The translations under genes and the position numbers were made by a program. Shown here in pieces: positions 8,800 to 63,112 of a stretch of 64,000 nt of DNA. The DNA lies in contig NW_024704935.1 of the NCBI RefSeq assembly GCF_018977255.1, positions 1 through 64,000 of the forward strand. Direction: 5' to 3'. How positions within the stretch are numbered: position 1 is the stretch's first letter; each line of letters starts with the position of its first letter. The notes beneath the pieces are model-generated. The model did not search any database and had not been told where the DNA came from. It saw only the letters and a list, made by a program, of their open reading frames with translations. Source of the stretch: Callorhinchus milii. Its lineage: Eukaryota.

Positions 8800-9599
8800 T
8801 TTCTGTGAGAAACAAACAGAAATGCTGGTGCAGGCCACACGGGATTCAATCAACAGTGAATCAGTCAGACGGCTTAAAAGTGCTTTATTTAAACTGCTGG
8901 AAGAATTCCCAGTGAGATATGCAGGTCTCACAAGCTGCAGTTAGTGACAATCTGGTGAACAATTCAATTAGTGAGCCTCAATCTGTGACATATGACGTTT
9001 CAATCAGTGCAACAGAAAATGAAAAAAAGAAAAACGAAATTAATGATTTCTCATTATTTTTATTCCGCAGATATTTGAAAATCTGACGTGTCTTGGGAAA
9101 CGTCTCCCATGCGCGGAAGATTGTTGCGTTTCTTTTTATATGTGTAACCATTGGAGCAGATGAACGGATAACTGCTGAAGTCAAAAACACTGTGGAGCTT
9201 TTTGCACATACCCAAACCACAACTGACTTAAAACACTGGGGATGCAGTTTTCGAATCACAACAAGTTGTGTCACAGAAAGTAAGGGAAAGAAATAATCCC
9301 TTTCTTAAACTAAATTGTGCTGCACAAAAACTAGCAATTGAAATGAATACAGGAACAACACACAACAATATACAGAATAATAATACTGATAAAAGTGCTT
9401 GAATTTGATAAAGCACCGATCGCAGCCGGAGGGTGTCCATAAAGTGCTTTATAGGATACATTATACTGGACATAGCTCCTTATTTTGTGGGCAACAAACA
9501 AAGACTTTTGCGCATAGCAATATCCCACAAACAGCCATGGATTCAGCAATAAAATTTATTTGGTCATTTCTCCCGTCTTTGGATCTTTGAACCTTGCTG

Positions 9600-23655: not shown

Positions 23656-26075
23656 CAACAACAACAACAAGATTCCATTTATAAAGCGCCTTTCACGTCA
23701 GGAGGACGTCCCAAGGCGCTGTACAGTTGGGTCATGACCCGGGCAGGGGGGAAATGGTCAGGGGGAGGGAAGGGAGGGGGGGGGGGGGGGGGGGAGGGAG
23801 CGAGGAGGGGGAAGAGAGTCGAGAGGGGAGCTGAAGGCACGGTCCAAGAGAAAGGTTTTGAGACCGGCCTTGAAGGAGGAAAGGGAGGAAGCAAGGCGAA
23901 GGCACTGGGGATGGAGTTCCAGAGCCTGGTGGCTGAGAGGCTGAAGGCCCGACCACCGATGGTAGGGCGGTTGGGGCGGGGGACGTGGAGCAGACCGGAG
24001 CCAGAGGAACGGAGGGTACGGGCAGGTAGGTAGGGGGATAGTAGGTTGGAGAGGTAGGAGGGAGCAAGCCCTGAATGGCCTTGTAGGTGAGGATGAGGAT
24101 CTTGAAATCAATCCTCTGGGGGATGGGGAGCCAGTGGAGGCGAGCGAGGGTGGGAGTGATGTGGTCGCGGTGTCTGGTGCGGGACAGTACACGAGCTGCA
24201 GAGTTCTGAATGACCTGCAGTGTGGAGGGAGGTGGCGGGAAGGCCGGCGAGGAGAGAGTTCCCATCGTCCAGCCTTGAGGTGACAAAGGCGTGGACCAGG
24301 GTTTCCGCAGCATGAGGGGTAAGGTAGTGCCGTAGTCTGGCGATGTTCCGAAGGTGATGGAAGGCAGTGCCAGTTGTAGTGCGGATGTGAGGGAGAAAGG
24401 ACAGCTCAGGGTCGAACAAAACGCCGAGGTTCCTGACTGGCTTTGAGAGGTGGAGAGTGCAGCCTTGGATGCTGATGGTGTCAGCGCCTAAGTTGCGGAG
24501 GCGCTGACGTGAGCCAATCAGGAGGGCCTCGGTTTTTCGCACGTTGAGCTGAAGAAAGTTGTCTCTCGTCCAGGACTCGATGTCGGACAGGCAGGCTGTC
24601 AGGACATCGGTGGTCGTGGAGTTGAGAGTAGAGGAGGAAAGGTAGAGTTGGGTGTCATCCGCATACATGTGGAAGTTAACTCCATGTCTGCGGATGATGT
24701 CACCGAGGGGGAGCATTTAGAGGGTGAAGAGGAGGGGACCGAGGACAGAGCCCTGAGGGACACCACATGAGACAGTGCGGGGGCTGGAGGAGAAGCCATT
24801 CGTTGAGACAAAGTGAAGACGGTGAGAAAGGTACGACCTAAACCATTCAAGGACAGTGCCTTGAAGGTTGAGGTGGGAGGACAAGCGGTGGAGTAGGATA
24901 GCGTAGTCGACCGTATCGAATGCTGCCGATAGGTCGAGGAGGACGAGGAGACAGAGGGAGCCCTGGTCACAGATGGTCACGATATCATTGGTGACCTTGA
25001 CCAGGGCAGTTTCTGTGCTATGGGCAGCACGGAAACCTGACTGAAGGGGTTCAAAAAGAGAATGGGTGGAAAGGAAAGAGCGCAGTTGGGAGGCGACAAC
25101 TCTTTCCAAGACCTTGGAGAGAAAGGGGAGGTTGGAGATGGGCCGGTAGCTTGATAGCTGCGACGCATCAAGGGAGGGTTTTTTCAGGGTGGGCGTGATG
25201 ATGGCAGTTTTTAATGGAATGGGGACAGAGCCAGAGGAGAGGGACAGGTTGATGATGTCAGTGATATGTGGGGCAAGAAAGTGGAGCTGGTAGATAAGGA
25301 GTGGAGTGGGGATGGGGTCAAGGGAGCAGGTGGTTGGTTTTAGGGATAGGATGAGTTCAGTGACAGAGGGTGGGGAAACGGGTACGAAGGTGTTTAGGGG
25401 AGGATGGGTAGGAGTCGGAGTGTGGGAGGGAAGGGGTGGCTGGTGGGTGGAAGTGAGGGAAGTGACCGGAGCGGATTGTCTGGTTCAGGAATCAGTCTGC
25501 GTNNNNNNNNNNNNNNNNNNNNNNNNNNNNNNNNNNNNNNNNNNNNNNNNNNNNNNNNNNNNNNNNNNNNNNNNNNNNNNNNNNNNNNNNNNNNNNNNNN
25601 NNNNNNNNNNNNNNNNNNNNNNNNNNNNNNNNNNNNNNNNNNNNNNNNNNNNNNNNNNNNNNNNNNNNNTCGGAGGGACTTTAACTGGTGCTGCGGGGAA
25701 TGAATTCATCTAATTTTGAGGGGAGAAGTGATTCTGGAAGTAGCATTAGAGAAGACGGTCAAGTTACATAGAGGGGGAGGGGTTGGGGTTGAGCCGTGGT
25801 GGAGCATTGACAGGAGGTTGAGAATGTGGTTGAGAGGGTGGCCCCGTAGACAGGGAACTTTGGGCCTTGCGGCGAGAATGAGGGATAGGGCAATCAGAGT
25901 GGCTGCTGTTGGAAAGCCAGCAGCGTCTGCAAACTTCGGCGTAAAGGAGGGTTCAAGGAGGTTGAAGGAGAGACGTTACGGGAAGGTTGATCAGGGTTAG
26001 GAGTAAGGAAGGACAGTGGGAAACGACGACAGAGTGGGAATAATGCAGCTTAGAGGACAGTGTTGGTAGCATTTT
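23656..26075 (-). mobile_element. Young L2 LINE, 5'-truncated, RT largely intact, spans the 167-N gap at 25503-25669
   Basis: ORFs with [34 protein letters not shown] and [16 protein letters not shown]; 3' stem-loop and (ttg)n tail at 23656-23720. Confidence 0.93.
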
Positions 26076-31021: not shown

Positions 31022-34000
31022 TTATTTACAGAGGAGCCGGCAGGGGGCGGTGAGGACATCTCGGATTTGCTGTCGGAAGCGGCTCTGTGTCAGGCCGTAG
31101 ATGGCGGTGTTTGTGCAGGTGCTGAGGAGCTGCAGCATCACGCCCGCCTCCTGCAGGATGTACAGAGGATCTTGAGCACCCACCGTATTGGCGTTGTAGC
31201 TGACCATTGGCCAGAACAGGAAGTGAATAATGTACGTCAGCCACAGCAGGACGAAGCTGCCAGAGACGGCGAAGAGCAGAACGATGGACTTCCTGCGGCT
31301 CTCCATCTCCGGGTCCTGCTCACTGCCTCCCGCCCCTCTCCCGCTCCTTCCTGCCCGCAGCCTCTTCCGCGCTCGGCCGGTCACCAGGATGTGCCGGACG
31401 GTGATGGAGTTGAGGAGAAAGATCAGCAGCACCGGCACGAGTGGAGTGAGCGCACGATGAGCTGCCAGAAGCCTGCCCCAAGCCGCCGAGGTATAGAACG
31501 ACATCTTACAAATGCAAAAGTAGGGCTGGTTCCCCAACACGGCCCCGGGCTCAAAGGTAAAGTACCAGGGAATGTTCTTCAGGAGGCAAACGCTAGCGAC
31601 TGATCCGATAATGATTGCCGCACTCCTCTCGGTGCAGAAGCGGAGCTTGAGGCTGGGGCAGCAAATGGCAACGAAGCGGTCGAGGGTGAAACTGACGGTG
31701 AGCCAGACCGAGGCGTCGGTGCAGGCGGACAACAGAGCCACGCGGGAACTACAGACAGGCGTGAGCATCAGGAAGCTGAGAGGGAAGTACAGGTTGTTGA
31801 TTCGGTTGAGAATGACGTCCGTGATCAGAACCAGTAGGTCTGAACCCGCCATCGCCACCAGGTACAGCGTGACGCATCGGCTCAGGCCACACTGCCCTCG
31901 GCACAGAACCACCATGGCCAGCACGTTCACTGTAACACAAAAGCAAATCAACTTGCCTTTACACAGCGCTCCTCATGCTAATGTTGGGGAATGAGGGACA
32001 AAGCTGATGGTTTGAGGAAGACAGTTCCAGTGTTTCGTGGTATGTTGTCCATTGCACGTAAATAAAAACAACTTGCCTTACGCAGCGCTCTTCACGCGGT
32101 GTAGCGTCCCGGAGCGACTAACAATTACAGTGACTGATACTGCGCCAGCGGTAGAGGTAAGTTGACAGTAAGCACGAACAACATTGAAGTGTCATTAGGC
32201 ATTATTTGAATTTTGGCAGGGAATGGGAATGGTGGAGGGATTGATGGAGAGGGTTCCAGAGTTTCGGGGCGTAATGTTTTAAAATATTGCCGCCGATGAT
32301 CAAGCGGAGGGTTCCCGTAGCAGGCCAGAGCTAGCCAAACCGAGGCACAGATTTTGGAAAAAGCCGTTAAGAAAGTTGGCCTATGCCCGGTATCAGGGAT
32401 TTGTGGTCGAATGGGATAACTGAACTAACGGGGTAGCGCCTATAGGGTGGAAGAGAATGCGAGTCTGTTGGAGAGCAGACTGGTGAGAGGATGCAGCCAG
32501 AGCCGAATCCTGGTGTCCCGAAGCAAAGTGTTTCGCTCGCTCCCTTCTGCACATCCATCACTCCATTACACCATTCCAATCTTTTCACGCCTTAGGACCT
32601 CACTGCCTCTCTGACCTGATCAATAGCCACTCCTCGGCTCGGCCATTGTTTGGCTGCATTCAATGTTGTGCCCTGTAGCTCAGTGGTTAGAGCACTCGCT
32701 CTCACAAGTGGGAGACCTGGGTTCGATTTGGAGCAGGGCGAATCGTTAGACAAGTTTGCTAACTCCACACGCCACAGTTTACCTTGCATTAACTCGGAAA
32801 CTGGTTGTTAATCTACTGATGAATCGCTTTTTATTCCGGGGATAATAATTCCTTGGAAAAAATAATAAATTGGTCACTTCCACATCCACAATATTTTTGG
32901 GACACTGCTGTGAGCAATTGAGTGCCACGGTGCGCTAATAGAGAATCAAATCACTTTGCAGTATATTCTGTGAAGCAATTTGAGACGTCTCGAAGACGTG
33001 ATAAGGCACGACACCAAATGCAAGGATTGTTAAGTATTATTATTATTTCAGGTGGAATCGCACTGAATAGATGCTAGCGCACTCGCCTCGTAAATTGGCG
33101 ACCCGGGTTTGATTCCCGGGCAGGTCGATACAGTGGTCAAGTTTATTTACACCTTGCACCGCTGTTTACCCTCAGCAAGATTTCGGTAGATAATCGATTG
33201 GAGATCGCTCTCTGGGCTTAATCTTGTTTCAGAATAAAAATTTGGTCATTCAATCACGTCGTACTTACGGCGAGCTAAACAGAGGGCGTGGAAACTTTCC
33301 TATAGTATCGCCCTGCCTGGCAATCGAACCCGAGTCCTTTTCATTGAAAGGCGAGTGCTCTTATCAATATTATATAACCAATACAGTAATCTACGATTAT
33401 TATGATTATTTTTGCGAGGATTATTTTCGGCAGCCATTCCCTGTAAATGCCTTTGAGACATTTCGATGTAACAGCACTCAATGAAATCGAATTATTGGAA
33501 GTATTCCAAACATTTCGTAACACAAACGTGTCAGAGCAGCAGCTGCCAGCAATAATCTCACCTTCTCTTTCTCAACGACATCCCTCAACGGCTGCTGTAT
33601 TCTACTAATGCTAATACATACATTTGATGTCGTTGGCCGAGATAGCAGGAGAAATGACAATAATAATAATGATAATAATAATAATAGTGAATTCAGTATG
33701 TATTTTGGTAGCGAAAAAAGGCTGACAAGTGCTCACAGCAGATTCCCACACAAAGTTGTTGATTATGACCAAATTGTCATTTATTTTTGGAAGGAATTAT
33801 TACCACCAGAAAATAGATCCACCAATCATCTAACAACCGGCTTCCTACTTATTTAAGTGAACGTATGGGCGTATGGAGTAAATATACTTCCACAATGTTT
33901 CACTCTGCCTGGAATCGAACGCGGATCTCTCGTTTGCACGGCAAGTGTTTAAACACTGAGCTACAGGAAGCCATAATATTTCGAATAGCGCTGGGGATCT

Positions 34001-39974: not shown

Positions 39975-40990
39975 GTAGCACTTCAGAAGGTTTGACAGTG
40001 GTTAGGGTTAGGGTTAGTTCAGCACGCCGTTGAGTCGCGGGGTGGGGGAGGGGCAGGTGACCATAAGTAACTTCGAAGACAGGGAAGGAAGGGGCAAGGC
40101 GAAGCACAGAGGAAAACAGTTCCAGAGCTTCGGGTCGTAGTGGCAGAAAGCGTGGCCACCAATGGTAGAACATGGGGCATGAGGGACTTGCAGAAAGCTG
40201 AAGCCAATCGACCGGCCGGAACAGGTTGTGGGTTTGGAGGTAAGCTGTGTCGCTGAACCCTTCCTCCTCAAAATCTATATGCTGCATCTTGGTGACATCA
40301 TCCGCTGTCATGGAGTCAATGTCCACATATTTGCGGATGCACCCCATTGAATGCCTGTCAGATATCAAGTCCTGGACGAGAGAGAAATTATTTCAGTTGA
40401 ACGTCAACAAGATAAAATCCGTTCTGGTAGGCCCCTGTCAGCGCCTCCACAGCTCCGGCGCTGACAGCATCACCATTCACGGACGCACAAACCACATTTC
40501 TAAGCCAGTTCGGAACCTTGGAGTCTTGTTTGACCATCAACTATCTTTACCAGCCCAATTCCGTGCCATAACACATCGTGCCTTTCCCAACAGAGGGGAG
40601 AGCAAAGCCTTCCATGCCCTCAATCCCCACGACATCTGCGACCTCCTAACTCTCTACAAACATGTCCGCTCAGACTGCTTAGCGTGCTCCAACCTGCTTC
40701 CCATCCTCTCCGACCCCAACATTGCTAGGCGAGCCTTCAGCAGCTGTGCCCCCACCATTTGCAAATCCGTCCCGCAGTTCCACCGCCTCGACCCCTCAAT
40801 TTTCTTCTTAAGACCCAACTCAAGACACTTTACTCCGATCGTGCTTTCGATTACCCTCCTTACCGCTTGTCCTCCACACTCCCCGATCCCGATACTCAGC
40901 TCGGGTCCGCAACGCTGGTTGTCGAGCAATTTCGGACATCCTCCCAACGTGAAATCTACAACAGAAATGTAATGATGTTGTTGTTATAAG
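39975..40990. mobile_element. Two back-to-back L2 3' fragments (minus 39975-40245; plus 40250-40990)
   Basis: L2 C-terminal motifs on opposite strands; tail ggacatcctcccaacgtgaaat near 40935. Confidence 0.65.
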
Positions 40991-41289: not shown

Positions 41290-42880
41290 GCTGCACACCT
41301 TAAAAAGCCAATCTATTCCTAATGAAGTAGATGCCCGAAACTGGAAGCAGTAAAATCCAGTCCTTATAAAGCTGAAACATCATTTCCTCCCTTTTATATT
41401 CCAGCCTCCTTGAGATTAAGGCCAACATCTTATCTGCCTATTTTGTAAAATTTTGCACCTGTGAACTTGATTCCAGTGCTTTGTGCACTTGGACACCCAA
41501 ATCATTTTGCTATTCCACAGTTCTTAGTTTCTCACCATATGGAAATATTCGGTTTTGCTATACCTGGACCCAAACTGGATTACCTAATGCTTCCCCGCAT
41601 TGACTTCCATCTGTTAAACTTTTGCCCACTCACTTAATCTAAGACCATTTGTAATTTCAAACCTCCAGTTGGTTGTGTCAAATTACTGAGTGTCGTCTGC
41701 AAGTTGGTACATAAAATTCTTCATTCCTTCATCCAAGTTATTTGCATTTACTTGTCGTTTAATTTCCTGCACAGCACCCTCTCCACCACACTCCACGCCC
41801 TTGCCCCTCTCACCTACAGAACTGCCTCCTATTCGCGAACCTCACCCTGGTTCACCTCCGGTCGCGAGTTCGGTGGACTTGAGCATAAGTATTTCTGAGC
41901 ATGAGGCGGCCTTCTTGATGGTCTCGGGTGAAAGCTGGGCAGAAATGTAGGGATGATTTCTTGATGGTGAGGGGAGGGATGCGAAAGCTGAAGGAGATGA
42001 GGAAGTGGTCGGAGATGGCCTTCTCCGTGATGGAAATGTCGAGGCCATATTTGATGACGGGGACTAGGGAATGGCCCCGCTTGTGTGTCGGCGAGATGAT
42101 GTGGAGGATGCAGTTTAGGGAGGAGCGGATTTCAGTGAAATTTGAGGATGTAGTGCAAAGGGATTTTCTCGGTGAAATTTGAAGTTGCCCATTATGAGCA
42201 GGCGGTCAGAGCAGAAGGATGGGAGAAGAAATGTCGGAGATATCGGAGAGGAAGGAGATGGGTTTGAGGTGGGGGCGGTAAGCCATGGAGAACTTTGAGT
42301 GAGAGAAAGGAGGGACCGTAGAGGGAGAGGTGCTCAATTGAAGAGAACCAGTCATAGGAATAATGGATTAGACGGAGGGACGCTCGAGGAATGAGGGTCA
42401 ACCCATCGCGTAGTTGCTGAGGGCGGGGTTTGTAATGGAAGATGTAGCCAGGAGGGTAACGTTACACTAATGCGGACGGAGACATTGGGTGAAAGAGAGG
42501 TTTCCCTAAGCCGACCGATATCCAGGTTCTCATCCAGGATGGGGTCGCGGTTAGTGAGGCTTTATCATGGAGGAAGTGAACATTTTGTGGAGCATTGCGG
42601 ATGGTTTTGTGGGTGGTGGTGGGAGAGCACGGAGTAGAGAGTGGTATGGGAAGTATTTGGGTTCGTAGGGGAGAAATGACCGTCGTATTTGAGGAAAAGT
42701 TTGTGATGAGAGGGCATGGCTGAGCTTGGAAGATGGGCTTTTGCCTTTCGGAGGGACGGAGCGACTGAACGGTGCTGTTGGCTGATCTCTGACGACCAAC
42801 GCCGGTTACCACGATGGGCCTGTCGGAGGGATCCCAGGCGACAACAGTTGGTGTCCCGGCGGGAAAGAAGACGGGAAGAC
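41290..42880 (-). mobile_element. Degenerate CR1 (41290-41760) and L2 endonuclease/RT (41765-42880) fragments
   Basis: cagtaatttgacacaaccaactggag (DDTKL region) and pyrimidine-rich L2-type ORF2 5' sequence. Confidence 0.55.
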
Positions 42881-42884
42881 CGGT

Positions 42885-43264
42885 GGGAGACGCACACGCA
42901 CATAAAACGCACACATACATACACCTACTAACACAGATACAAACACAGACGCAAACACAAACACACACAGACACACACAAACATAGACTCATCCGCACAC
43001 ACCACACACACACAGATATACATAGACACAGACACAAACAGACACAGTAACGCAGTCTCACAACCATACGCAGACAAACATAGAAAGACACACATAGACT
43101 CACACGCACACAGACACGAACCTGGATCTAGGGACACGCCCAAACATAAAGATACAAACACGCAAGCAGTCACACACGCACAATAAAACACACACACAGA
43201 CACATACAGACGGACACAAAGAAACACACATAAATAATCACCAACACACACAAACACACACACA
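42885..43264. repeat. CA-rich degenerate microsatellite
   Basis: (ca)n/(caga)n mosaic. Confidence 0.9.
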
Positions 43265-43584
43265 GTTCTTCCCGGTGTTTTCCACAGTCACATTTAACGC
43301 CAATGTCTGTCGTGACCAGGCTCCAGGCTGATTTCTCGTGCTTTCTCTGCTAGACTTGCCAGTGTCCGATTAACCCAAAGTTTCCTTTCTGGAAAAATCT
43401 GCTGAGAAACAGCACAGGGGTTTGTTTCCTGATTTTCCCAGCACCGCGCAAAACAGGGGCGACAGAAGTTGTGGCCGCACTGAAGGTTGACAGCAACAGT
43501 GAAGAAATCCAGACAAATCGGACAAATTATCTTCTCAATACAGATCCCAGCCTGGAGTCTTGAAGCAATTTTCACCATAACCAT
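43265..43584 (-). pseudogene. TRIM-family RING plus start of B-box, pseudogene
   Basis: CPICLDFFT...CGHNFCRPC...CAVS (last RING Cys lost)...VNRTLASLAEKAR; after a frameshift, CGKHREEL runs into the CA repeat. Confidence 0.85.
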
Positions 43585-48274: not shown

Positions 48275-49245
48275 TACATATAAATGATCTGCATTTGTGT
48301 ATAGAACGTACCATTTCCAGATTTCCGAACGAAATAAAGTTAGTAGATTGATAAACAGTGAGAAGGATACTCACCAACTGCAGGAAGACATAGACAAAAT
48401 AGGAAAATGGGCAGACAAAGGCCAGATGAATTGCAGTGTGGAGAAATGAGACGTGATGCCTTTTGGTGGAAAGAATGAGGGTAGGCAATGCAAGCTATGT
48501 GTACAATCCTTAGGGGGTAACATAACAGAGAGACCTGAGGGTGCAGGTAAATTAATCATTGCAGGTGTCAGGACAGCTAGATAAAGCTGTGAAAAGGGCA
48601 TATGGGTTACTAGGCTTTATAAATAGGGGCACAGAGTACAAGATTAAGGAAGTTATGATTAACGAGTATAAACACTGGTGAGGCCTCAGTTAGAATATTG
48701 CGCCCAGTTCTGGGCAGTACACTTCAGGAACGATGTTAAGGCATTTGATAGGGTGCAGTGGAGATTCACAAGAATGGTACCAGGAATGAGGGATCTTAAT
48801 TATGAGGAAAGGCTAGATAGGCTGGGATTATTCTCATTGGAGCAAAAAAGTATACGAGGAGAACTAATAGAGGTCGTCAAAATCATGAGCGTATTTGATA
48901 GGTTAGAAAGGGAGAAACTGTTTCGACTTGTGGGTGTGTCGTTGAATCGAGTTCACAGATTTAAAATAGTCTCCAAAAGAAGCCGGGGGGAGGTAAGCAG
49001 CGTTTTTTTCACGCAGCGAGTTGTTCGAATCTGGAAGGCATTGCCTGACAGGGTGGTGGTGGCCGATTCGATAACAACTTTTAAAAACGCGGTGGAAGGG
49101 TACTTGAGGTGGACTGGTTCGCAGAGATACGTGAAAAGGGCTGGGGAGTGGGATTGAATTTACAAATGCTCTTTACAAAGTGCTGGCACAGACTCGATGG
49201 GATGAATGGCCTCTTTTTCTGCTTTACGATTCTATGAATCTATGG
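48275..49245 (+). mobile_element. CR1 LINE 3' fragment
   Basis: ORF 48678-49157 RPQLEYCAQFW...RLGLFSLEQK...FFTQRVVRIWKALP; tail attctatgaatctatg. Confidence 0.9.
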
Positions 49246-54778: not shown

Positions 54779-54928
54779 TGACGTTAAAAATAATTTGCTG
54801 TAAATGCTGAATGTAAACCATCAATTATTGATCTGTGCAGGTCAGAGGGAATAAAACACGTGACTCTCCTCAGTCCTGGAGCTATTGGTCGATTCCCATA
54901 CGCCTGCCCCACTAGATCTTATTAAATA
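54779..54928 (+). promoter_or_regulatory. Putative IgH promoter (CRE-like TGACGTTA 54779-54786, E-box CACGTG 54857-54862, TATA-like TTATTAAATA 54919-54928)
   Basis: Motifs lie 90-240 bp upstream of the leader ATG. No octamer ATGCAAAT seen, consistent with the octamer-less IgH promoters known in cartilaginous fish. Confidence 0.55.
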
Positions 54929-55019
54929 GCGGTCACTGGTACCTGAGGTCATCTGTCCGGCTGCACTTCTTCCCTCGGTTATTCGGCACAAGTCTCAGTT
55001 CTGACAAGAGCCCAGAAAC

Positions 55020-55065
55020 ATGAGCTCCCCGATTTCTCTCAGTCTGCTGCTGGCTGTATTCACCT
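55020..55065 (+). CDS. Ig heavy-chain leader exon
   Basis: ATG...MSSPISLSLLLAVFT + T|gtaagg (phase 1); resembles chondrichthyan IgM leaders of the MRSAISLSLLL type. Confidence 0.88.
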
Positions 55066-55181: not shown

Positions 55182-55216
55182 TTGTCCAGGCCGATGTGGT
55201 GCTGTCAAGTGAAACT
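55182..55216 (+). CDS. Micro-V exon: end of leader plus 8 mature residues (FVQA/DVVLSSET)
   Basis: Acceptor attctttacag at 55180-55181; 35 nt in frame with the leader; directly abuts the heptamer. Confidence 0.85.
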
Positions 55217-55255
55217 CACAGTGATCGGAATCGGGGTTGAACTCCTACAAATACA
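55217..55255 (+). other. V 23-RSS
   Basis: CACAGTG + 23-nt spacer (55224-55246) + ACAAATACA. Confidence 0.9.
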
Positions 55256-55657
55256 CAAGCGGGAGAAGGTAGAACCTCCCTACATAAACTGGCACAGCCG
55301 TGATGTCAATGCAGTGTCTTTAACGGAGATTAAAGGAGAAGCTTAAGACGGATTTAATATCACACTAAAGCTACATAGTGAAACGTAGTTTGATTGGGAG
55401 AATGAGATTTTTTGTGCTGTGATATTCTGCGAATTCAGATGGTCAGTGACACTTTGCTGTTGAGGCGGGTAGGACTCCGATTGGAGGCTCACAATGCGAC
55501 GATTCACATACATCATCTCCGTATACGCTGTTGGAAGTAACAGTTTTCTGTTTCTGTGGAAATGAAGAAACTATTAGACAGACTCCATATCATGTCAGAG
55601 AGGAATAAGCACTTTCAGTAACTTTTGGCAGCCTGTGTTGAGCAGATATCGGTGGTC

Positions 55658-55735
55658 AGTATTTGTATGGGACTGTGTCACTGTGCAAACAACGAGCCAC
55701 GATGCTGCATACAGCTGCATCCTCAGACAAAAAAA
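55658..55735 (+). other. D1 segment CAAACAACGAGC (55686-55697), 12-RSS / 22-RSS
   Basis: AGTATTTGT-12-CACTGTG [D] CACGATG-22-ACAAAAAAA. Confidence 0.88.
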
Positions 55736-56047
55736 ACAGCCACAGAGACTGCTAATCACTTACATCACTACAAAATCCAAAGCACCAAAATAAGTGTTAC
55801 TCAAACTGGATTATTCTCAGAAACAAATTGGTGCATAGCAGATAAATTGAGATTAATTTGATTGCAGAGTGTTGATAAACAAGTTTGAGATTTGATCAGC
55901 TGCTTTCACATAAATCCAAGGCCAGTGATAAATATAAGAATTTATTTTGACGGAAAAGTTATAGGAGGCCTCACTGGAGAATGTGAAATGAGGTTCAGTG
56001 TTTCTCTGATATTATAGATGAATATTTATTAGTACATCCTGTGCAGG

Positions 56048-56113
56048 AGTTTTTGTCATATTGTGTATCACTGTGTAACAGCAACCACAGAGTTAACTGT
56101 CAATACAAAAACC
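56048..56113 (+). other. D2 segment TAACAGCAAC (56076-56085), 12-RSS / 12-RSS
   Basis: AGTTTTTGT-12-CACTGTG [D] CACAGAG-12-ACAAAAACC. Confidence 0.93.
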
Positions 56114-56450
56114 CTTCAACACCAAACCACCTGATATCTCACACAACTCGCTTATGTGGTTTCCTCTGAATATGCGGGGAAATGGTATGTGTAAAACAGT
56201 GTCGACCGCTGAGGAGGCTGCCAGATTTTAATAGGATTAAAGCATCACATTTTCTCTTCAATCTGCTGATGACAAGAAAAAGTGTTCAACAGGAACACTG
56301 CAAAATGGCAAACGTACACACATTTATAAAGTAAACAAAGAGCCAAGCAATTGTTTTAGAAAATTACAGATATATATTGTGCACTGTGTTTGGTTTGAGG
56401 AAACCAACATTTATAGTAATATTGTATTTGTGTGCCCTGCCCGCACAGCA

Positions 56451-56526
56451 GGTTTTTGCAGTGGGCCGCCACTGACTGTAGCACTGTGATAAGGGAACCA
56501 CGGCGTTAACTGGCAATGCAAAAACC
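56451..56526 (+). other. D3 segment ATAAGGGAAC (56489-56498), 22-RSS / 12-RSS
   Basis: GGTTTTTGC-22-CACTGTG [D] CACGGCG-12-GCAAAAACC. Confidence 0.9.
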
Positions 56527-56853
56527 CTTCAACACCAAACCACCTAATCTCTCTGACTTCTCCCTTGTGTGAGTTCCACTGAAGATACGGGGATTAGGTA
56601 CTTTTAAAAGCTGTTGACTGCTGAGGATTTTACCTGATTTCAATAGACATGAAACATTGCATTTGTCCGTCGATCTGCTCCTGACAAGGAAATGTGTTTG
56701 ACAGGAACACTGTAAGCTGGCAAAGATACAAGCATTGAACAGGTAAACACAGACCTTGTGAAATCGTTTACAAAAAGTTGCAGAAATATATCGTGGATTG
56801 GGCAAGTCCATATTTACAGAAATATTGTATTTGTGTGTCCTGCCCTCACAGCA

Positions 56854-56928
56854 GGTTATTGCAGTGGGCAGGCACTGACTGTAGCACAGTGACAAACCAG
56901 ACTACTGCGAGCATAGAAGTGACTCACG
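56854..56928 (+). other. J segment (coding 56892-56928, TNQTTASIEVTH) with 22-RSS; lacks WGxG
   Basis: GGTTATTGC-22-CACAGTG, then 37 nt ending G|gtaaga, a phase-1 donor compatible with the C exon at 60915. Confidence 0.85.
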
Positions 56929-58427
56929 GTAAGAAACAGATACAAACTCACTCGCTACACTGAACTTGTCTCTTTATATATTTGATATGTTCACTTTAAC
57001 AGCTATTTAATGTAATGAACTCCGCGTTGCTGGGTATCCCACAGTTTAATCCATGCTAAATTTGTTTAGCTTTTATTGCTTCCTGCAACCACCGTTTGTT
57101 TATGGATTATTCACCAAATAATTGATTAATTCTTTGTGATCTTTTTGATGTTTTGTGAATATCCCCATCCAGAAAGGTTATACTGATGGACGTTCTGCAA
57201 TGTCTAGTTTCGGTGACTGTCGGCTGCTGAGTTTCGGCTATAACGTTAAAGGGAATTTTATAAAGTGTTTGAAACTATGCTGAACATTGGAAATAAGGGT
57301 CTGAAAGTTGTGGGCTGAATGAAGAGAAGGTTATCAGATAGATTCCATCAAGTATTTCATTCCGTTTTTTTAATGTCATGAACGTGGCTACGATTTAAAG
57401 TGGTTGTTCTGGGAAAGGGGTTGAGTCTGACAGTAAATCGGATTTGTATTGCTACGATATGAGTGAAACTATAGCAGCTCAACCACCACGGACTGAAAGG
57501 TTTTATTTCTGTCAGTGTTAACATTAATGATTTGCTCACAGTATATTTTCCCTAACGATTAGTGAGCAACAGTTTGAGCTCAGGCTTCATTTCAGTATTA
57601 ACAGCGATTCAGTGAACATCACTTCGATTTCACGCCGTATTAGAGACACAAGAGGTCGGTGTTGATCTACTATCATCAGCTTCCTGTTTTACGATAACGA
57701 GTAGCAGAAAAACATTGATTTGTCGATTAAATATTTGATAAAATTTGAATACATTTGCTGTATTTTAAGAGATCCTATAGTTCATGGGATGTTCAGCACA
57801 CAGCGACACTGCAGTGAAGGGGGTGAAACGACGCAGTTACTTATTTTACTGTAACATATTATTTAGTTATTCTGTGTAAGTTTTTGTGCTGCAGGGCATT
57901 GTGACTGTGAGATACATTGCAAAATGTACAATGCTTCACGCTTGATGTGGAAGAACGGTGTGTGAGCTGATTGTGCAGTTACTGGGAGAGTCAGCCGGAG
58001 AGAAAATAATGTTAATTCACTTCTGGAATAATGGATGGAAAGAGTTTGTGCTGGAGATGAAAGGATCGAGTCTAGGATAATGTGTGAGACCCGATTAAAC
58101 AGCTTTGAGCAGTGCAACAGCAAATGGCTGAAGCGGGATGTTTGAGTGTGTGTAGAGCGGCTGGGAGCTGGGTTCGTGTTTAACACACGGTCCCACGGGT
58201 AGGAAAGAGCAAGGTGAAGGTTTGTTTTGTAATGATCTTACCAGAGGTCGAGAAATCCACTGCTGAATAATTGTTATATTCAGTGTGATTTCTGAAACCG
58301 GTTTTCCCGAGTTCTTAAGAAGAAACGGATTCAAAATTTAAAGGAAATTTAAGAATTTTATACGCTTCCATGAAATCTTAAGATAAAGGCATAATGATCT
58401 CCCAGTGTTTATTATTAGCTGAGGATT

Positions 58428-58858
58428 CAACAACAACAACATTCCATTTATAAAGCGCCTTTCACGTCAGGAGGCCGTCCCAAGGCGCTGCACAGTTGGG
58501 TCATGTCCCGAGCAGGGGGAAAATGGTCAGGGTGAGGGGAGGGAAGGGAGGGAGTGAGGAGGGGGAAGAGAGTCGAGAGGGGAGCTGAATGCACGATCAA
58601 AAAGAAAGGTCTTGAGACCGGCCTTCAAGGAGGAAAGGGATGAGGCAAGGTGAAGGCACTGGGGGATAGAGTTCCAGAGCCTAGGGGCTGAGAGGCTGAA
58701 TGCCCGACCACCGATGGTAGGGCGGTTGGGGCGGGAGACGTGGAGCAGACCGGAGCCGGAGGAACGGAGGGTACGGGCAGGTAGGTAGGGGGATAGTAGG
58801 TTGGAGAGTTAGGAGGGAGCAAGGCAGTGAATGGCCTTGTAGGTGAGGATGAGGATTC
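58428..58858 (-). mobile_element. Young L2 3' fragment in the J-C intron
   Basis: Highly similar to 23656-24100; (caa)n tail at 58428-58440. Confidence 0.9.
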
Positions 58859-60484
58859 TTATTTCAGAAGCGAACAATGTCTCTAGTTTTATCATTATTA
58901 TATTCAATGTATTTATAGCTGACAAGACGGAGGCCGCGAGTGTAGGAAACAGAGCCACGGATACCAGGGCCGCTTGTTGTTCAGTGTTTATAGCACCTGC
59001 CTCTGTCTGTCAGCCTGTGAAACATGAATACAACATGACCGCAGTACATTTAACTGTCAGCCAAAAAATCTAACACAATTCAGAATAATACAGGCTGTGA
59101 AGCAAAGTAGAGAGTTATCCTTACTGGGTGTCCTGTAGCTCAGTGTTTAGAGCTATTAACCGACTGCTTTTCTGTGGTTATTAATCACTTCAAAATAATA
59201 ACAATAATAATAATACATTGGTCACTCAATCCATTACTGGTTGTGGGCACTGCCGTCTGCAATCGGAAGCCCTTTTCACCCACAAATATACAGTGAATTT
59301 CCTGTACAATATATTCTGCGGAGCATTTCGAGACGTCTCTAAGATTATATTCTGAAATATGAATGTTGAATATTTCTGTGACTCCTTTTAGCGCTGTGTG
59401 GCTCCTGCAGGTTCCGCTGAACCCAATCACAAATCAGACAGTTTTCCCTGTGAGAGGCTTTTGTGGGGCACAACACAGATTGCAGTCCTTCATTCCTCAT
59501 GTAAAACACTGAATCGGCCCTTTCTGTGGGCTCTCCTGTGAAACAGACAAACAAATATCTGTGGCACGGAAAATATAGTAACCTCACTTGACAATATATT
59601 CTGTGAAGCGCTTTGAGATGTCCCGAAGACGCGCTAAGGCACTATATCAAATGCACGAAATATTATTATTATTATATAATAATTAATGTACAATTTTAAC
59701 ACCACACAGCGGCTGTCTGCTTCGCATCTGATTGTGGCGATTCTATAATCAGTCTGAACGGAGCAATTTGTTTTAATAAATGTCAGAGCCAGAAAGACTC
59801 ATGCTTTAAATTTTCAGACGATTGCATAAAAAATTAAGATTATGCAGCTATCTGATTAACCGTGAAATACATATTTTTGGGCAAATTAAATAGACCATTT
59901 GAAAATAGAAAAAAGTTTTAATTTCAGCTGCGTATCTAAATGGCACGCAGACATAAGTCTTAAAACAAAGTTGCTGTTGTAAGAACAGGAAATATTTTAA
60001 TCTGGAACAGTTGATAATTAATTTTGTAAGAAAAGAGACATTATCGCTGTGTCTAAACTTAAACTGGTCACGTGGTGACTTTGATCTACTACTCAGTCAA
60101 CGCAGCGTCACTGACACCAGATTCTGGGACAGATTTATTTAATGAATAAATCTCTGCATTTGTTTGACTATTTCGCTGCTGAAACGTGACCCATGAGACG
60201 TAGAAAATTCTGGCACATGCCAAATACAGGACATGTCCCACAAACCGTCGTAGACAGAACGGTCAATTTTATTTCGGGAATTTTTGACCGGGAAAAGGGA
60301 GAGAGAGAAAGCGAGTGAGGGAAATGGAAATAGTAAAATGGACAAAGAGCAAAGTAATTGTGAGTGAGATGGTAACTGCCTTCTGTTTTCAAATAGGCCG
60401 TGGGATCTTCGACGTCCGAATGAAGGCAGACGGGGTCTCGGTTTCAAGACTCAATAAATACATTCCTAGATATATACATACATG

Positions 60485-60505
60485 CATACACACACACACA
60501 CACAC

Positions 60506-60542
<37 letters not shown>
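60485..60542. repeat. (CA)n microsatellite
   Basis: Near-perfect CA run. Confidence 0.95.
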
Positions 60543-60546
<4 letters not shown>

Positions 60547-60914
60547 GCAACAGAAAAACTAATACAGTTCAGATACGAACGGGATAGCAATGACGTGACC
60601 CAGTTCAGTTGGCCCGGAGAAGACCGAGGAAGGCTCAATTGTAGCCAACAGGGCAACGAGAATACCAGCGTTTTTAACTCCACACCAACTTTGGAGTTTA
60701 GCATAACAGTTGAGACAAAACGATTGCGGAGATTGCAAGGTTTTTTTTTTAAAAAATGTTTGTTTACTGGGAAGATTAAAAGAGAAAAGCCAATGAGAGA
60801 GAAGATGTCACTTCATGGCTGAGTTCAATGTCTGTTTCAAAATTAATATCAATTTCACGCAACAAAAAATGCCCCAATCGAACTAAGTATAAACTATTAT
60901 TTAATGTATTGCAG

Positions 60915-61241
60915 GTAATCAAACGAAACCGTCACCCCCAGTTGTTATCCTCACACAGCCTTCCTCTGAAGATATCACAATGCATAAACCGGTAACTGCT
61001 GTCTGCTTAATATCCGGTTTCCATCCGGACAAACTGAGTGTTAAATGGCTGAAGGATTGGCAGCCCATCATCTCAGGTATTGTGACCTCTTCCTCGATTA
61101 AAGAAGACAATATGACATTCAGCACCAGCAGCCGCCTGACTGTCCCCGCCAGAGAGTGGAGGAGTGGCGTGGTTTACACCTGCCAGGTGTCCCATGAACC
61201 CACCCAGACCATCATTGTCAAGAACATCACCAAGTCCTCAG
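60915..61241 (+). CDS. IGHM: IgM constant exon Cmu2
   Basis: gtattgcag|GT...TCA G|gtaggg, 327 nt. GNQTKPSPPVVILTQPSSEDIT...AVCLISGFHPDKLSVKWLKD...TSSRLTVPAREWRSGVVYTCQVSHE matches shark Cmu2 motifs (FHPxS, WLKDG, TSRLTVPAREW, YTCQVSH). Confidence 0.88.
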
Positions 61242-61897
61242 GTAGGGGGCACGGCACCATCTGACACACACGGCAACAACATGGCACTCAGTATCCTTTC
61301 AAATGTCCACTTGTGGGAGCTGCTGCGTCAGTTTGACTTTCACCCTTTTGGGATATTTCAACCCGAACAATAAATATGTGAACTTTGACCGAAAGTTTAT
61401 TTATCTGTACAACATGAGGAAATCGCGCCCCAATCCTCACCATGTTAACAGGAGATGGCCAGGAACACCATGTTTCTAATCTGCTACTCAATTGTAGATC
61501 TCGCATCTGTCACAGGATCACGTGACTGTGAATTGTAATTCCCATATTCTACACTCTTCTTCAACATCTGCTTTCACTAAAATTTCTCGTCCCAAAGCCA
61601 CAATTTGGGTTAATCCGAATATATGTACAATTAAGTGTACAGTTGCAGCTCATCCAATGCATGCGTTTAATCCGCAGTTTTGTCAGTCGGACGTAATTGA
61701 AAATCAATTAGCAGATTATCATTGAATGTTTCAGGAAGCCTTATTCAAATCTCCAGTAAATTATTCCAACACCAACTGATACTTATATTAAGACACATCA
61801 TTCTGTGTTCAGCTCATCCGGAATTGTTTAACTTGATTGAATAGGAAATCCTGGAACTTGGTTTTTATTTGTGTTTCATTTTCTTTTGCTTTTCTAG

Positions 61898-62209
61898 AGT
61901 GTGAGCTTCCCATTGGAAGTGTCAAGGTCTCTTTGCTGCCACCCTCACAGCAACAGGTTTTGATGGAATCCTCTGTAACGCTGACATGTGTTGTGGTTAA
62001 TGCACCTCCTGACGTCACCGTGACTTGGACACAAGGAAATACACATTTACAGTCTGGAAATGGGAAACCGTCTGCTACTGAGCCTCAGGAAGTGATCAGT
62101 AAATTAATCATTTCTTCACAAGACTGGAACAGTGGGAAAGAATTCTTCTGTGTTGCCAGCCATGACGATATGCCAAATCCAATCAAAGAAATGACATTGA
62201 AGAGGAAAG
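61898..62209 (+). CDS. IGHM: IgM constant exon Cmu3
   Basis: ttttctag|AG...AAA G|gtgagt, 312 nt. ECELP...LLPPSQQQVLMESSVTLTCVVVNAP...VTWTQ...WNSGKEFFCVASHDDMPNP; the N-terminal Cys is available for an inter-chain disulfide. Confidence 0.9.
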
Positions 62210-62720
62210 GTGAGTAGCCAGGTTTCAGGAAATAAATCATTTATTTATTTACTTATTTATTTATTTATTTATTTATTGTAATTTCAGGTTGAAGACGACA
62301 GATGCAATTGTGAATACAATTATATGCTCTCTGTTTTTTACTGCTTGACGATAGATAAATTTATTCCCTCGCATGCTGGCCAAAAACCAATAGATAGATA
62401 TAACTTGATAAGTACATTAATTCACACGAATTATATCGAAGCAATATCTAGTCATTACATCTGGAGGCTATTTACATATTTTCTTATTGAGTTAAGGTAG
62501 CCACATCTAAACTGCTGGTCACTTGGTGCAAATAATAAAGTGCTGTCGGGACATTAGAATCCACGCTAGAGTTCCCAGTTACACCCGCAGTTACAAACCA
62601 CTGAGCACAGCCTGAACAGATACACACATTATTCTCAGATTGTTCTGCAGGACCTGGAGCTTCAAACTTCTCTCAGATTCACATCATCAGTGTACTGATT
62701 CGCTTGTTTACTTCCCACAG

Positions 62721-63112
62721 TTGAGTACACAAAACAACCGTCGGTGTATCTCCTCCTCCCCTCGGCAGAGGAATTGTCTGCTCAGTACACTGTCACCCTC
62801 ACTTGCCTGGTGAAGGACTTCGCTCCCAAAGAGATCTTTGTGCAGTGGACTGTGAATGACCAGGTGATTGATGCTAAGAACTTCAGGAACACTGAGGTGA
62901 TGGCAGACAGTGCAGATCACAACTATTCCATGTACAGCATGTTGTCCATCTCAGCTGGAGAGTGGAACAGTGGTCTCTCCTACTCCTGTGTGGTCGGACA
63001 TGAAACCTTCCCACTGAAGACCCTGACCAGAACCGTTGATAAATCGAGCGGTAAACCGAGTTTTATAAATACTGCCCTTGTCCTGGTGGACAGCATGAAT
63101 ATGTGTCAATAA
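62721..63112 (+). CDS. IGHM: IgM constant exon Cmu4 plus secretory tailpiece
   Basis: ttcccacag|TT; VEYTKQPSVYLL...TLTCLVKDFAPKEIFVQWTVND...YSCVVGHETFPLKTLTRTVDKSS/GKPSFINTALVLVDSMNMCQ*. Internal donor G|gtaaac at 63050/63051 for membrane exons, which were not found in the window. Confidence 0.93.

What the first reader, a model, noticed from the sequence alone, without database searches (positions are those of the whole stretch)
56086..56891. Birth of a new D segment by tandem duplication of the D-J interval, with RSS ends preferentially conserved
Seen: 56086-56488 and 56499-56891 are homologous ~400-bp units, each running from a D 3' 12-RSS to a J-type 22-RSS. D3 is the 10 nt between the J-type RSS of unit 1 and the D-type RSS of unit 2, which explains its unusual 22/12 polarity and keeps the 12/23 chain valid. 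The middles have visibly diverged, while ~50-70 bp at each RSS end remain nearly identical. Inference: purifying selection on recombination signals long after the duplication, supporting a functional locus and adding a fourth junction.
Basis: partly seen in the sequence, partly recalled or inferred. Interest (0 to 1): 0.7.

Follow-up and report, generated by a model that had tools for sequence, protein, structure and literature searches.

The report
Third D segment born by duplication
A chimaera-type antibody heavy-chain mini-gene carries a real 0.4-kb tandem duplication that created a third, correctly signal-flanked D segment, but the gene around it has lost its V domain body, the core of its J segment and its CH1 exon, so the new D cannot now feed a normal antibody.

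Summary
Windows 56086-56488 and 56499-56891 are homologous units (74% identity, E 4e-72). Each runs from a 12-spacer RSS to a 22-spacer RSS, with 10 nt (D3, 56489-56498) between them. Identity is not uniform: 91.5% over 47 + 71 bp at the ends against about 68% in the middle (0/300 permutations).

The locus is a holocephalan (Callorhinchus-like) IgM-type cluster with the chain V23 | 12-D1-22 | 12-D2-12 | 22-D3-12 | 22-J.

D3 is best read as a diverged copy of D2 that acquired the J-type 22-RSS. The repeat is therefore D2 plus the D2-J interval, exchanged heptamer to heptamer.

The conserved blocks reach 19-33 bp beyond the nonamers. Shark clusters do show RSS-plus-flank conservation, but at about one-third the strength seen here, so later homogenisation between the copies probably adds to selection.

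The "functional locus" inference fails for a conventional antibody:
- The V exon is 35 nt.
- J lacks WGXG.
- CH1 is absent.

CH2-CH4, the leader and the splice sites remain intact and constrained. It is a new variant of a known kind, of moderate interest.

The parts
55020..55065 (+). Leader exon (MSSPISLSLLLAVFT + 1 nt), donor GTAAGG
   Evidence: Read directly. tblastn with C. milii and Hydrolagus IgM leaders gives 75-80% identity.
55182..55216 (+). Remnant of the V exon: 35 nt (F)VQA|DVVLSSET, running straight into the RSS heptamer. The V body (FR1 codon 5 to FR3) is absent.
   Evidence: There is no tblastn match to V residues 25-117 anywhere in the window.
55217..55255 (+). V 3' 23-RSS, CACAGTG-23-ACAAATACA
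55658..55685 (-). D1 5' 12-RSS (CACAGTG-12-ACAAATACT in RSS sense)
55686..55697 (+). D1 coding, CAAACAACGAGC
   Evidence: Lies between the two RSS heptamers.
55698..55735 (+). D1 3' 22-RSS, CACGATG-22-ACAAAAAAA. A second 22-RSS-like site follows at 55741-55778.
56048..56075 (-). D2 5' 12-RSS (CACAGTG-12-ACAAAAACT)
56076..56085 (+). D2 coding, TAACAGCAAC
56086..56488 (+). Duplication unit 1: D2 3' 12-RSS (56086-56113), intervening DNA, and the D3 5' 22-RSS (56451-56488; CACAGTG-22-GCAAAAACC in RSS sense)
56489..56498 (+). D3 coding, ATAAGGGAAC. Probably a diverged copy of D2.
   Evidence: Its 3' 5 nt match D2 at 4/5 (p 0.012-0.04). A gapped match to A+D2 is 8/11 (p 0.003-0.04).
56499..56891 (+). 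Duplication unit 2: D3 3' 12-RSS (56499-56526; CACGGCG-12-GCAAAAACC), intervening DNA, and the J 5' 22-RSS (56854-56891; CACTGTG-22-GCAATAACC in RSS sense)
56892..56928 (+). J-like segment of 37 nt with donor GTAAG. It reads TNQTTASIEVTH in the splice frame. The DYW and VT edges are kept, but the 22-nt WGQGT core is replaced by 11 nt.
   Evidence: No other J-like exon is present.
60915..61241 (+). CH2 exon (phase 1)
   Evidence: tblastn gives 73% identity to C. milii IgM residues 247-347. Pfam assigns C1-set.
61898..62209 (+). CH3 exon
62721..63112 (+). CH4 exon with secretory tail (GKPSFINTALVLVDSMNMCQ) and stop codon

Best explanation
WHAT IT IS. The region is the V-to-J part of a holocephalan (Callorhinchus-like) IgM-type heavy-chain cluster. 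An approximately 413-bp segment was duplicated in tandem. That segment comprised D2, its 3' 12-RSS, and the D2-J intervening DNA up to the J 22-RSS heptamer.

HOW D3 AROSE. The junction placed a copy of the J-type 22-RSS directly 5' of a second copy of D2. That copy has since diverged into D3. This gives the chain V(23) | (12)D1(22) | (12)D2(12) | (22)D3(12) | (22)J, which obeys the 12/23 rule. It would allow V-D1-D2-D3-J (four joints) or joining that skips D3.

SHOWN VERSUS INFERRED. The duplication, the RSS types and the uneven identity are shown.

Inferred point 1: both breakpoints sit at RSS heptamer borders (D2 5' heptamer and J 5' heptamer). The event was therefore a heptamer-to-heptamer exchange between misaligned chromatids. 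It happened either by microhomology-mediated crossing-over or by a germline RAG hybrid joint.

Inferred point 2: the near-identity of the ends is a mixture. One part is the modest RSS-plus-flank constraint seen in shark clusters. The other part is later homogenisation (gene conversion) between the copies.

PRESENT STATE. The cluster cannot encode a conventional V domain. The V exon is 35 nt, the J FR4 core is gone and CH1 is absent. D3 is therefore at present a structurally valid but probably idle recombination element. CH2-CH4 remain under constraint for an unknown reason.
For: - Duplication and boundaries.
- RSS chain and spacers.
- IgM identity and holocephalan affinity.
- D3 resembles D2, and the alignment runs through D2/D3 and the 5' heptamers (56064-56492 against 56477-56895).
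- End-versus-middle contrast: 91.5% against 68%, K2P 0.09 against 0.305.
- The conserved blocks overrun the RSS.
- Shark yardsticks: paralogous intervals give 0.86/0.80 and 0.73/0.72 at the ends against 0.67 in the middle. Flanks beyond both nonamers are conserved across elasmobranch genera.
- V truncation, J lesion and absence of CH1.
- CH2-CH4 open, with only 1 change (R to K) at 56 columns invariant in the other lineages.
- Germline RAG activity and hybrid joints in sharks are documented (PMC2193153).
Against: - No second holocephalan cluster could be fetched, so selection and conversion cannot be separated directly.
- The shark yardstick is one paralogous pair plus two cross-genus pairs, about 400 My away from this lineage.
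- Ten nucleotides cannot fix the breakpoints. A J-start/D2-end chimera also fits at 7/10 (p 0.015-0.15).
- Intact RSSs, promoter-like TATA, leader, splice sites and constrained C exons sit oddly with a dead locus.
- The window's RSS variants lie within the natural range seen in sharks, so recombination competence is not excluded.
Confidence: 0.6

Rival explanations
1. After the duplication, purifying selection on the recombination signals alone kept the RSS ends alike. The locus is functional, and D3 adds a fourth junction to expressed antibodies.
For: - The ends are significantly more alike than the middle.
- All eight RSSs keep CAC, an A-rich nonamer and correct spacers.
- The variants match natural shark RSSs.
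- Elasmobranch clusters conserve the RSS plus about 30 bp of flank across genera.
- The C exons are constrained.
Against: - The V exon is reduced to 35 nt, J lacks WGXG and CH1 is absent.
- Heptamers and nonamers are not the best-conserved parts (27/32 against 81/86).
- Yardstick-strength constraint predicts about 78% identity at the ends, not 91.5%.
- Older paralogous RSS flanks in the same cluster are not conserved.
Confidence: 0.15
2. De novo D by a germline RAG signal joint. A trans (sister-chromatid or inter-cluster) D2-to-J recombination in germ cells left the reciprocal chromosomal signal joint 22-RSS|12-RSS. D3 is the junctional insertion, as postulated by Lewis and Wu (2000).
For: - The architecture is exactly the predicted reciprocal product.
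- Unit boundaries coincide with RAG cleavage sites.
- The hypothesis and germline RAG activity in sharks are in PMC2193153.
Against: - D3's 3' 5 nt match D2's 3' end at 4/5 (p 0.012-0.04), and D3 aligns to D2. A random insert would not do this.
- A 10-nt insertion at a signal joint is unusually long.
Confidence: 0.08
3. Ordinary illegitimate unequal crossing-over, with breakpoints inside J (after about 4 nt) and inside D2 (before its last about 6 nt). D3 would then be a J-start/D2-end chimera with no involvement of RSS or RAG.
For: D3 begins ATAA against J's ACAA and ends GGAAC against D2's GCAAC. The best chimera matches at 7/10 (p 0.015-0.15).
Against: - It needs two random breaks that each fall within 10 nt of a heptamer border.
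- The whole-D2 model fits at least as well.
Confidence: 0.15
4. The cluster is not dead but makes a V-less, CH1-less mu chain. This could arise by splicing the leader directly to CH2 (both phase 1, in frame). It could also arise by rearranging the V stub, the Ds and the J stub into a short variable glycosylated peptide fused to Fc(mu2-4).
For: - The three lesions remove just the Fab-specific parts. Leader, splice sites, RSSs, J donor and CH2-CH4 are intact.
- The C exons are constrained.
- J is open only in the splice frame.
- V-less IgW transcripts (PMC5192425) and CH1-less holocephalan IgM (PMC2150980, PMC11659936) are precedents.
Against: - No transcript or protein from this cluster is in the protein database; the best hit is 77% identical.
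- A recently dead pseudogene cluster gives the same picture.
- Pseudogene IgH clusters are known in sharks (PMC2435157).
Confidence: 0.07

Closest known systems
Canonical cartilaginous-fish IgM cluster (VH-D1-D2-JH-Cmu1-4)
   Same: - Cluster layout with segment spacing of about 350-400 bp.
- V 23-RSS, D1 12/22, D2 12/12, J 22-RSS.
- IgM-type CH2-CH4 with a secretory tail.
(PMC2435157, PMC3308330)
   Different: There is a third D with 22/12 polarity. The V body, the J FR4 core and CH1 are missing.
IgNAR clusters (V-D1-D2-D3-J, four rearrangements)
   Same: Three D elements in one cluster, and a potential for four joints (PMC5192425, PMC4279169).
   Different: The constant exons here are IgM-type, not IgNAR or IgW type. 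IgNAR is reported absent from elephant shark (PMC4279169). The IgNAR RSS polarities could not be read from the held texts.
Holocephalan CH1-less IgM heavy-chain-only antibodies (ratfish COS5; C. milii models such as P0013)
   Same: J or VDJ is followed directly by CH2, and the sequence sits in the holocephalan IgM lineage (PMC2150980, PMC11659936).
   Different: Those genes have a complete V domain and WGQGT. In the tree the window's C region is not inside the P0013 clade. The key paper (Anumukonda et al. 2022, Eur J Immunol 52:247) was not readable here.
Germline RAG remodelling of shark Ig clusters (joined genes; hybrid-joint RSS swap; postulated D genesis) - Lewis and Wu 2000
   Same: A new segment bounded by one 12-RSS and one 22-RSS, with breakpoints at heptamer borders (PMC2193153).
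   Different: RAG involvement is not shown here. D3 looks like a copy of D2 rather than a junctional insert.
Pseudogene IgH clusters of sharks (nurse shark groups 6-8, G2C)
   Same: A cluster with defective V(D)J parts within a multi-cluster family (PMC2435157).
   Different: Here the C exons show no sign of decay.

Membership tests
Cartilaginous-fish IgM heavy-chain cluster | Cmu2-Cmu4 exons with an IgM secretory tail | tested here: met
   72-77% identity to C. milii IgM. PDB hits are to IgM Cmu2-4, and Pfam finds three C1-set domains.
Cartilaginous-fish IgM heavy-chain cluster | Complete VH exon ending in YYCAR followed by a 23-RSS | tested here: not met
   The 23-RSS is present, but only 35 nt of V exon remain. 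There is no V-body match in 64 kb.
Cartilaginous-fish IgM heavy-chain cluster | JH encoding WGXGT..VT with a 22/23-RSS and a splice donor | tested here: not met
   The RSS and donor are present, but the WGXG core is replaced. Shark J segments and holocephalan cDNAs all have WGQGT.
Cartilaginous-fish IgM heavy-chain cluster | CH1 exon | tested here: not met
   There is no CH1 match between J and CH2, even at E = 50.
Cartilaginous-fish IgM heavy-chain cluster | Two D segments, 12/22 and 12/12 | tested here: met
   D1 and D2 are as expected, with an extra D3 of 22/12 polarity.
Recombination signal sequences obeying the 12/23 rule | CAC-heptamer, a 12- or 22/23-bp spacer and an A-rich nonamer at every segment border, with each successive pair being 12 against 22/23 | tested here: met
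   Eight or nine RSSs, with 0-2 heptamer and 0-2 nonamer mismatches. Hits number 11 against 1.5 in shuffles.
Recombination signal sequences obeying the 12/23 rule | Cleavage and joining by RAG | not testable with these tools
   This needs recombination substrates or lymphocyte DNA.
Holocephalan CH1-less IgM (heavy-chain-only, COS5-like) | J spliced directly to CH2, with no CH1 | tested here: met
Holocephalan CH1-less IgM (heavy-chain-only, COS5-like) | Single-domain-type V region present | tested here: not met
   There is no V body.
Holocephalan CH1-less IgM (heavy-chain-only, COS5-like) | C region groups with known CH1-less genes | tested here: inconclusive
   The window is sister to a clade that holds both CH1-bearing (P0003) and CH1-less (P0013) genes.
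IgNAR-type three-D cluster | Three D segments between V and J | tested here: met
IgNAR-type three-D cluster | IgNAR V and IgW-like C domains | tested here: not met
   The C exons are IgM-type.

The most novel reading that the evidence does not exclude
D3 is a sequence-level fossil of germline RAG activity creating a new D segment. In this reading, a trans hybrid joint formed in germ cells between the 12-RSS 5' of D2 on one chromatid and the 22-RSS 5' of J on the other. This is a legal 12/23 pair. It would give exactly this product: the duplicated interval, a precise J-type heptamer, and a D2 copy with a processed 5' end (the extra A could be a P nucleotide). It would be the missing example for the D-genesis and RSS-swapping scheme that Lewis and Wu proposed in 2000.
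Probability: 0.22. Interest if true: 0.75.

Novelty: new variant of a known kind. Interest (0 to 1): 0.45.

Why it matters
How D segments arise, and how 12- and 23-spacer signals come to be distributed so that the 12/23 rule still works, is an old question in the evolution of antigen-receptor loci. This locus preserves both parental copies and the junction of one such event. A single duplication produced a new D with the opposite signal polarity, and the chain stayed legal.

The same cluster raises a second question. It is an IgM-type gene whose Fab-encoding parts (V body, J core, CH1) are gone while its Fc exons stay under constraint. If the duplication is shared with, or absent from, other holocephalan clusters, it can date the event. 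That comparison can also separate selection from gene conversion on RSS-adjacent DNA.

Tried and rejected
1. Dispersed repeat or assembly artefact. The units occur only here and differ by 25%.

2. Another J exon or hidden CH1 or V remnants. None was found.

3. My impression that the flank upstream of D2's own 5' RSS matches the D3/J flank. It is not significant (p 0.35-0.41).

4. Conservation of the window's RSS flanks with shark flanks. It is not significant (p of at least 0.08), although shark-to-shark flanks are conserved.

5. My interim argument that the D3 3' RSS and J 5' RSS had decayed. I withdrew it. Shark D2 3' heptamers are CAC(A/T)GCA, and shark J nonamers carry T at position 5.

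6. A pure signal joint plus a random insert as the origin of D3. This is disfavoured.

7. Fetching holocephalan cluster DNA. The window's CH4 ORF and P0013 are not on record. All C. milii Ig proteins in the database lack contigs.

8. Reading Anumukonda et al. 2022. It is not held under its PMC id, DOI or PMID. The supplement of the elephant-shark genome paper is not held either.

9. An octamer upstream of the leader. None was found. There is only an 18-nt TATA-region match to the catshark VH promoter, at 15/18.

Full report
OBSERVATION

Repeat families with start-to-start spacing of 403-413 bp cover them. A gapped alignment gives 74-75% identity over about 405 columns, and blastn gives E = 4e-72. 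Neither unit has any other copy in the 64-kb window. With a quarter of positions different, this is an old duplication and not an assembly artefact.

- CACAGAG-12-ACAAAAACC at 56086-56113.
- CACGGCG-12-GCAAAAACC at 56499-56526.
- In the opposite sense, CACAGTG-22-GCAAAAACC at 56451-56488.
- CACTGTG-22-GCAATAACC at 56854-56891.
- Ten nucleotides (ATAAGGGAAC, 56489-56498) lie between the two inner heptamers.

A simple RSS scan finds 11 sites in the window against 1.5 in shuffles, and eight of them lie within 55217-56891.

Identity along the units is not uniform. The best two-breakpoint split puts 56086-56132 and 56418-56488 at 91.5% and the middle at 67-69%. This holds under three scoring schemes, and no permutation out of 300 reaches it. 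K2P distances are 0.090 and 0.305.

WHAT THE LOCUS IS

Downstream lie three phase-1 exons:
- 60915-61241
- 61898-62209
- 62721-63112

They splice in frame to the J donor and encode 343 residues with three C1-set domains and an IgM-type secretory tail. The best relatives are Callorhinchus milii IgM heavy chains (72-77%), then Hydrolagus (58%) and the sharks (about 50%). Solved structures match Cmu2-Cmu4.

In a tree of CH2-CH4 the window sits inside the Callorhinchus radiation on its own branch. A GPCR gene elsewhere in the window is only 82% identical to its best C. milii match. The organism is therefore a holocephalan near Callorhinchus, with the species not fixed.

The segment chain is V(23) | (12)D1(22) | (12)D2(12) | (22)D3(12) | (22)J. 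This is the canonical cartilaginous-fish VH-D1-D2-JH arrangement (PMC2435157, PMC3308330) plus one extra element.

THE SURROUNDINGS DO NOT LOOK LIKE A WORKING ANTIBODY GENE

After an intact leader exon (55020-65) and intron, the V exon is 35 nt long (VQA|DVVLSSET) and runs straight into the 23-RSS heptamer. Full-length C. milii, Hydrolagus and nurse-shark chains find the leader and the first FR1 codons. They find nothing for V residues 25-117 or for CH1, even at E = 50.

The J-like segment keeps its edges (GACTACTG ... GTGACTCACG|GTAAG), but the 22-nt WGQGT core is replaced by 11 nt. It reads TNQTTASIEVTH in the splice frame. Two shark J segments align to each other without gaps at 40/48, and every holocephalan chain in hand has DYWGQGT. 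No other J-like exon exists in the cluster.

CH1-less IgM is a known holocephalan speciality: ratfish COS5 and 'holocephalan IgM HCAbs' (PMC2150980, PMC11659936). C. milii gene models such as P0013 run VDJ straight into CH2. Those genes, however, have a full V.

In contrast to V and J, CH2-CH4 are open. They deviate at only one of 56 columns (R to K) that are invariant in fifteen other lineages, no worse than expressed genes.

HOW THE DUPLICATION AROSE

The homology runs through D2/D3 and into the 5' heptamers (56064-56492 against 56477-56895).

D3 resembles D2. Its last five bases match at 4/5 (p 0.012-0.04), and with one leading A it aligns to D2 at 8/11 (p 0.003-0.04). A J-start/D2-end chimera also fits at 7/10 (p 0.015-0.15).

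The simplest reading is that the repeat unit is D2 plus the D2-J interval. The exchange would have taken place between the heptamer 5' of D2 and the heptamer 5' of J. D3 would then be a D2 copy that received the J-type 22-RSS, which explains its 22/12 polarity automatically.

That exchange could be a microhomology crossover. It could also be a germline RAG hybrid joint in trans, because the two signals are a legal 12/22 pair. Germline RAG joining and a hybrid-joint RSS swap are documented in sharks, and de novo D formation by germline recombination has been proposed (PMC2193153). The variant of that proposal in which D3 is a junctional insert at a chromosomal signal joint is disfavoured by D3's likeness to D2.

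WHY THE ENDS ARE MORE ALIKE

The conserved blocks are not confined to the signals. The 19 bp beyond the 12-RSS nonamer are 19/19 identical, and the 33 bp before the 22-RSS nonamer are 31/33. Heptamers plus nonamers score 27/32 against 81/86 for spacers plus flanks (Fisher p = 0.13, so not significantly different).

Older paralogous RSS flanks within this cluster show no similarity.

As a yardstick I fetched shark IgM clusters.
- Between bamboo shark and catshark, the roughly 30 bp beyond both nonamers are significantly conserved (p of 0.012 or less). The next block is not.
- Two bamboo-shark paralogous intervals with the same overall divergence (70%) reach only 0.86/0.80 at the 12-RSS end and 0.73/0.72 at the J end, against 0.67 in the middle.

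That corresponds to roughly 30% constrained sites. It would predict about 78% identity for the window's ends, not 91.5% (about 3.5 standard deviations).

I therefore think that selection of the usual strength is supplemented by later homogenisation between the two copies. I cannot separate the two without a second holocephalan cluster.

An interim idea that the D3-3' and J-5' signals had decayed was withdrawn. Shark D2-3' heptamers are CAC(A/T)GCA, and shark J nonamers have T at position 5.

WHAT REMAINS ODD

Three localized lesions remove just the Fab-specific parts: the V body, the J core and CH1. The following all survive, and the C exons are constrained:
- the TATA region (15/18 to a catshark VH promoter)
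- the leader
- the splice sites
- eight RSSs
- the J donor
- the Fc exons

This could be a recently dead cluster, since pseudogene clusters are known (PMC2435157). It could also be a gene that now makes a V-less mu chain. Leader-to-CH2 splicing would be in frame, and V-less IgW transcripts exist (PMC5192425). No transcript evidence was available.

COMPARISON AND NOVELTY

- Three Ds and four joints are the hallmark of IgNAR (PMC5192425, PMC4279169), not of IgM-type clusters.
- IgNAR is reported absent from elephant shark (PMC4279169).
- In the texts I could read, I found no description of an IgM-type cluster with a 22/12 third D.
- The one paper most likely to bear on this, Anumukonda et al. 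2022 on holocephalan heavy-chain-only genes and their CDR3 repertoire (cited in PMC12227049), is not held.

I rate it a new variant of a known kind. It is moderately interesting as a clean record of how a D segment and its signal polarity can arise. It is less interesting as evidence of function, which it does not provide.

Noticed in passing
window 55182-55216: The V exon of the cluster is only 35 nt. It has four FR1 codons, then a few bases resembling the ...TGT GCA AG V end, then the 23-RSS. This looks like one internal deletion of about 290 bp, possibly at a CTG microhomology.
   Followed up: partly
window 56892-56928: The J-like segment has intact edges and donor, but its WGQGT core (22 nt) is replaced by 11 nt. 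It is open only in the splice frame. Together with the start of CH2 it carries two NQT glycosylation sequons.
   Followed up: partly
window 56929-60914: There is no CH1 exon between J and CH2, so the cluster is CH1-less like the holocephalan heavy-chain-only IgM genes.
   Followed up: partly
window 60915-63112: CH2-CH4 are open and conserve 55 of 56 family-invariant residues despite a long private branch (0.17). The secretory tail has lost the usual N-x-S/T sequon (FINTA instead of FVNIS).
   Followed up: partly
window 55698-55778: Two 22-spacer RSS-like sites lie in tandem 3' of D1: CACGATG-22-ACAAAAAAA, then 5 nt, then CACAGAG-22-ACAAAATCC. The short stretch AACAGC before the second heptamer resembles D2 (..AACAGCAAC|CACAGAG).
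   Followed up: no
L001 about 9560-9590, L004 about 7716-7770, L002 about 4159-4220, and the regions before their J RSSs: In elasmobranch IgM clusters, about 30 bp beyond the D2 3' nonamer and about 30 bp before the J nonamer are conserved between bamboo shark and catshark (p of 0.012 or less). The 5' half of the J RSS spacer ((C/T)TACA(G/T)TC..TGG) is shared even with the holocephalan window. These may be unrecognised RSS-adjacent functional elements.
   Followed up: partly
L003 about 7296-7320: This bamboo-shark unjoined cluster appears to lack the D2 3' 12-RSS and the first 150 bp or so of the D2-J interval, relative to its paralogue L004. It may be a defective cluster.
   Followed up: no
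window 17793-18881 (+), 31022-31951 (-), 6819-7327 (-): These are GPR139/142-like rhodopsin-family GPCR ORFs (7tm_1). They belong to a family greatly expanded in cartilaginous fishes. The best C. milii match is only 82% identical. The Ig cluster sits among them.
   Followed up: partly
window 3410-5143 (-), 24108-25109 (-), 40247-40972 (+), 48678-49157 (+): These are reverse-transcriptase (RVT_1) fragments of LINE-like retroelements. One lies next to the N run at 25503-25669.
   Followed up: partly
window 43294-43584 (-) and 42462-43263: There is a RING-finger (C3HC4) ORF like a TRIM first exon. It lies beside a long TG/CA-rich low-complexity stretch.
   Followed up: partly
window 54922-54939: TTAAATAGCGGTCACTGG upstream of the leader matches the catshark VH promoter TATA region at 15/18. 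No octamer (ATGCAAAT) occurs within 1 kb upstream.
   Followed up: partly
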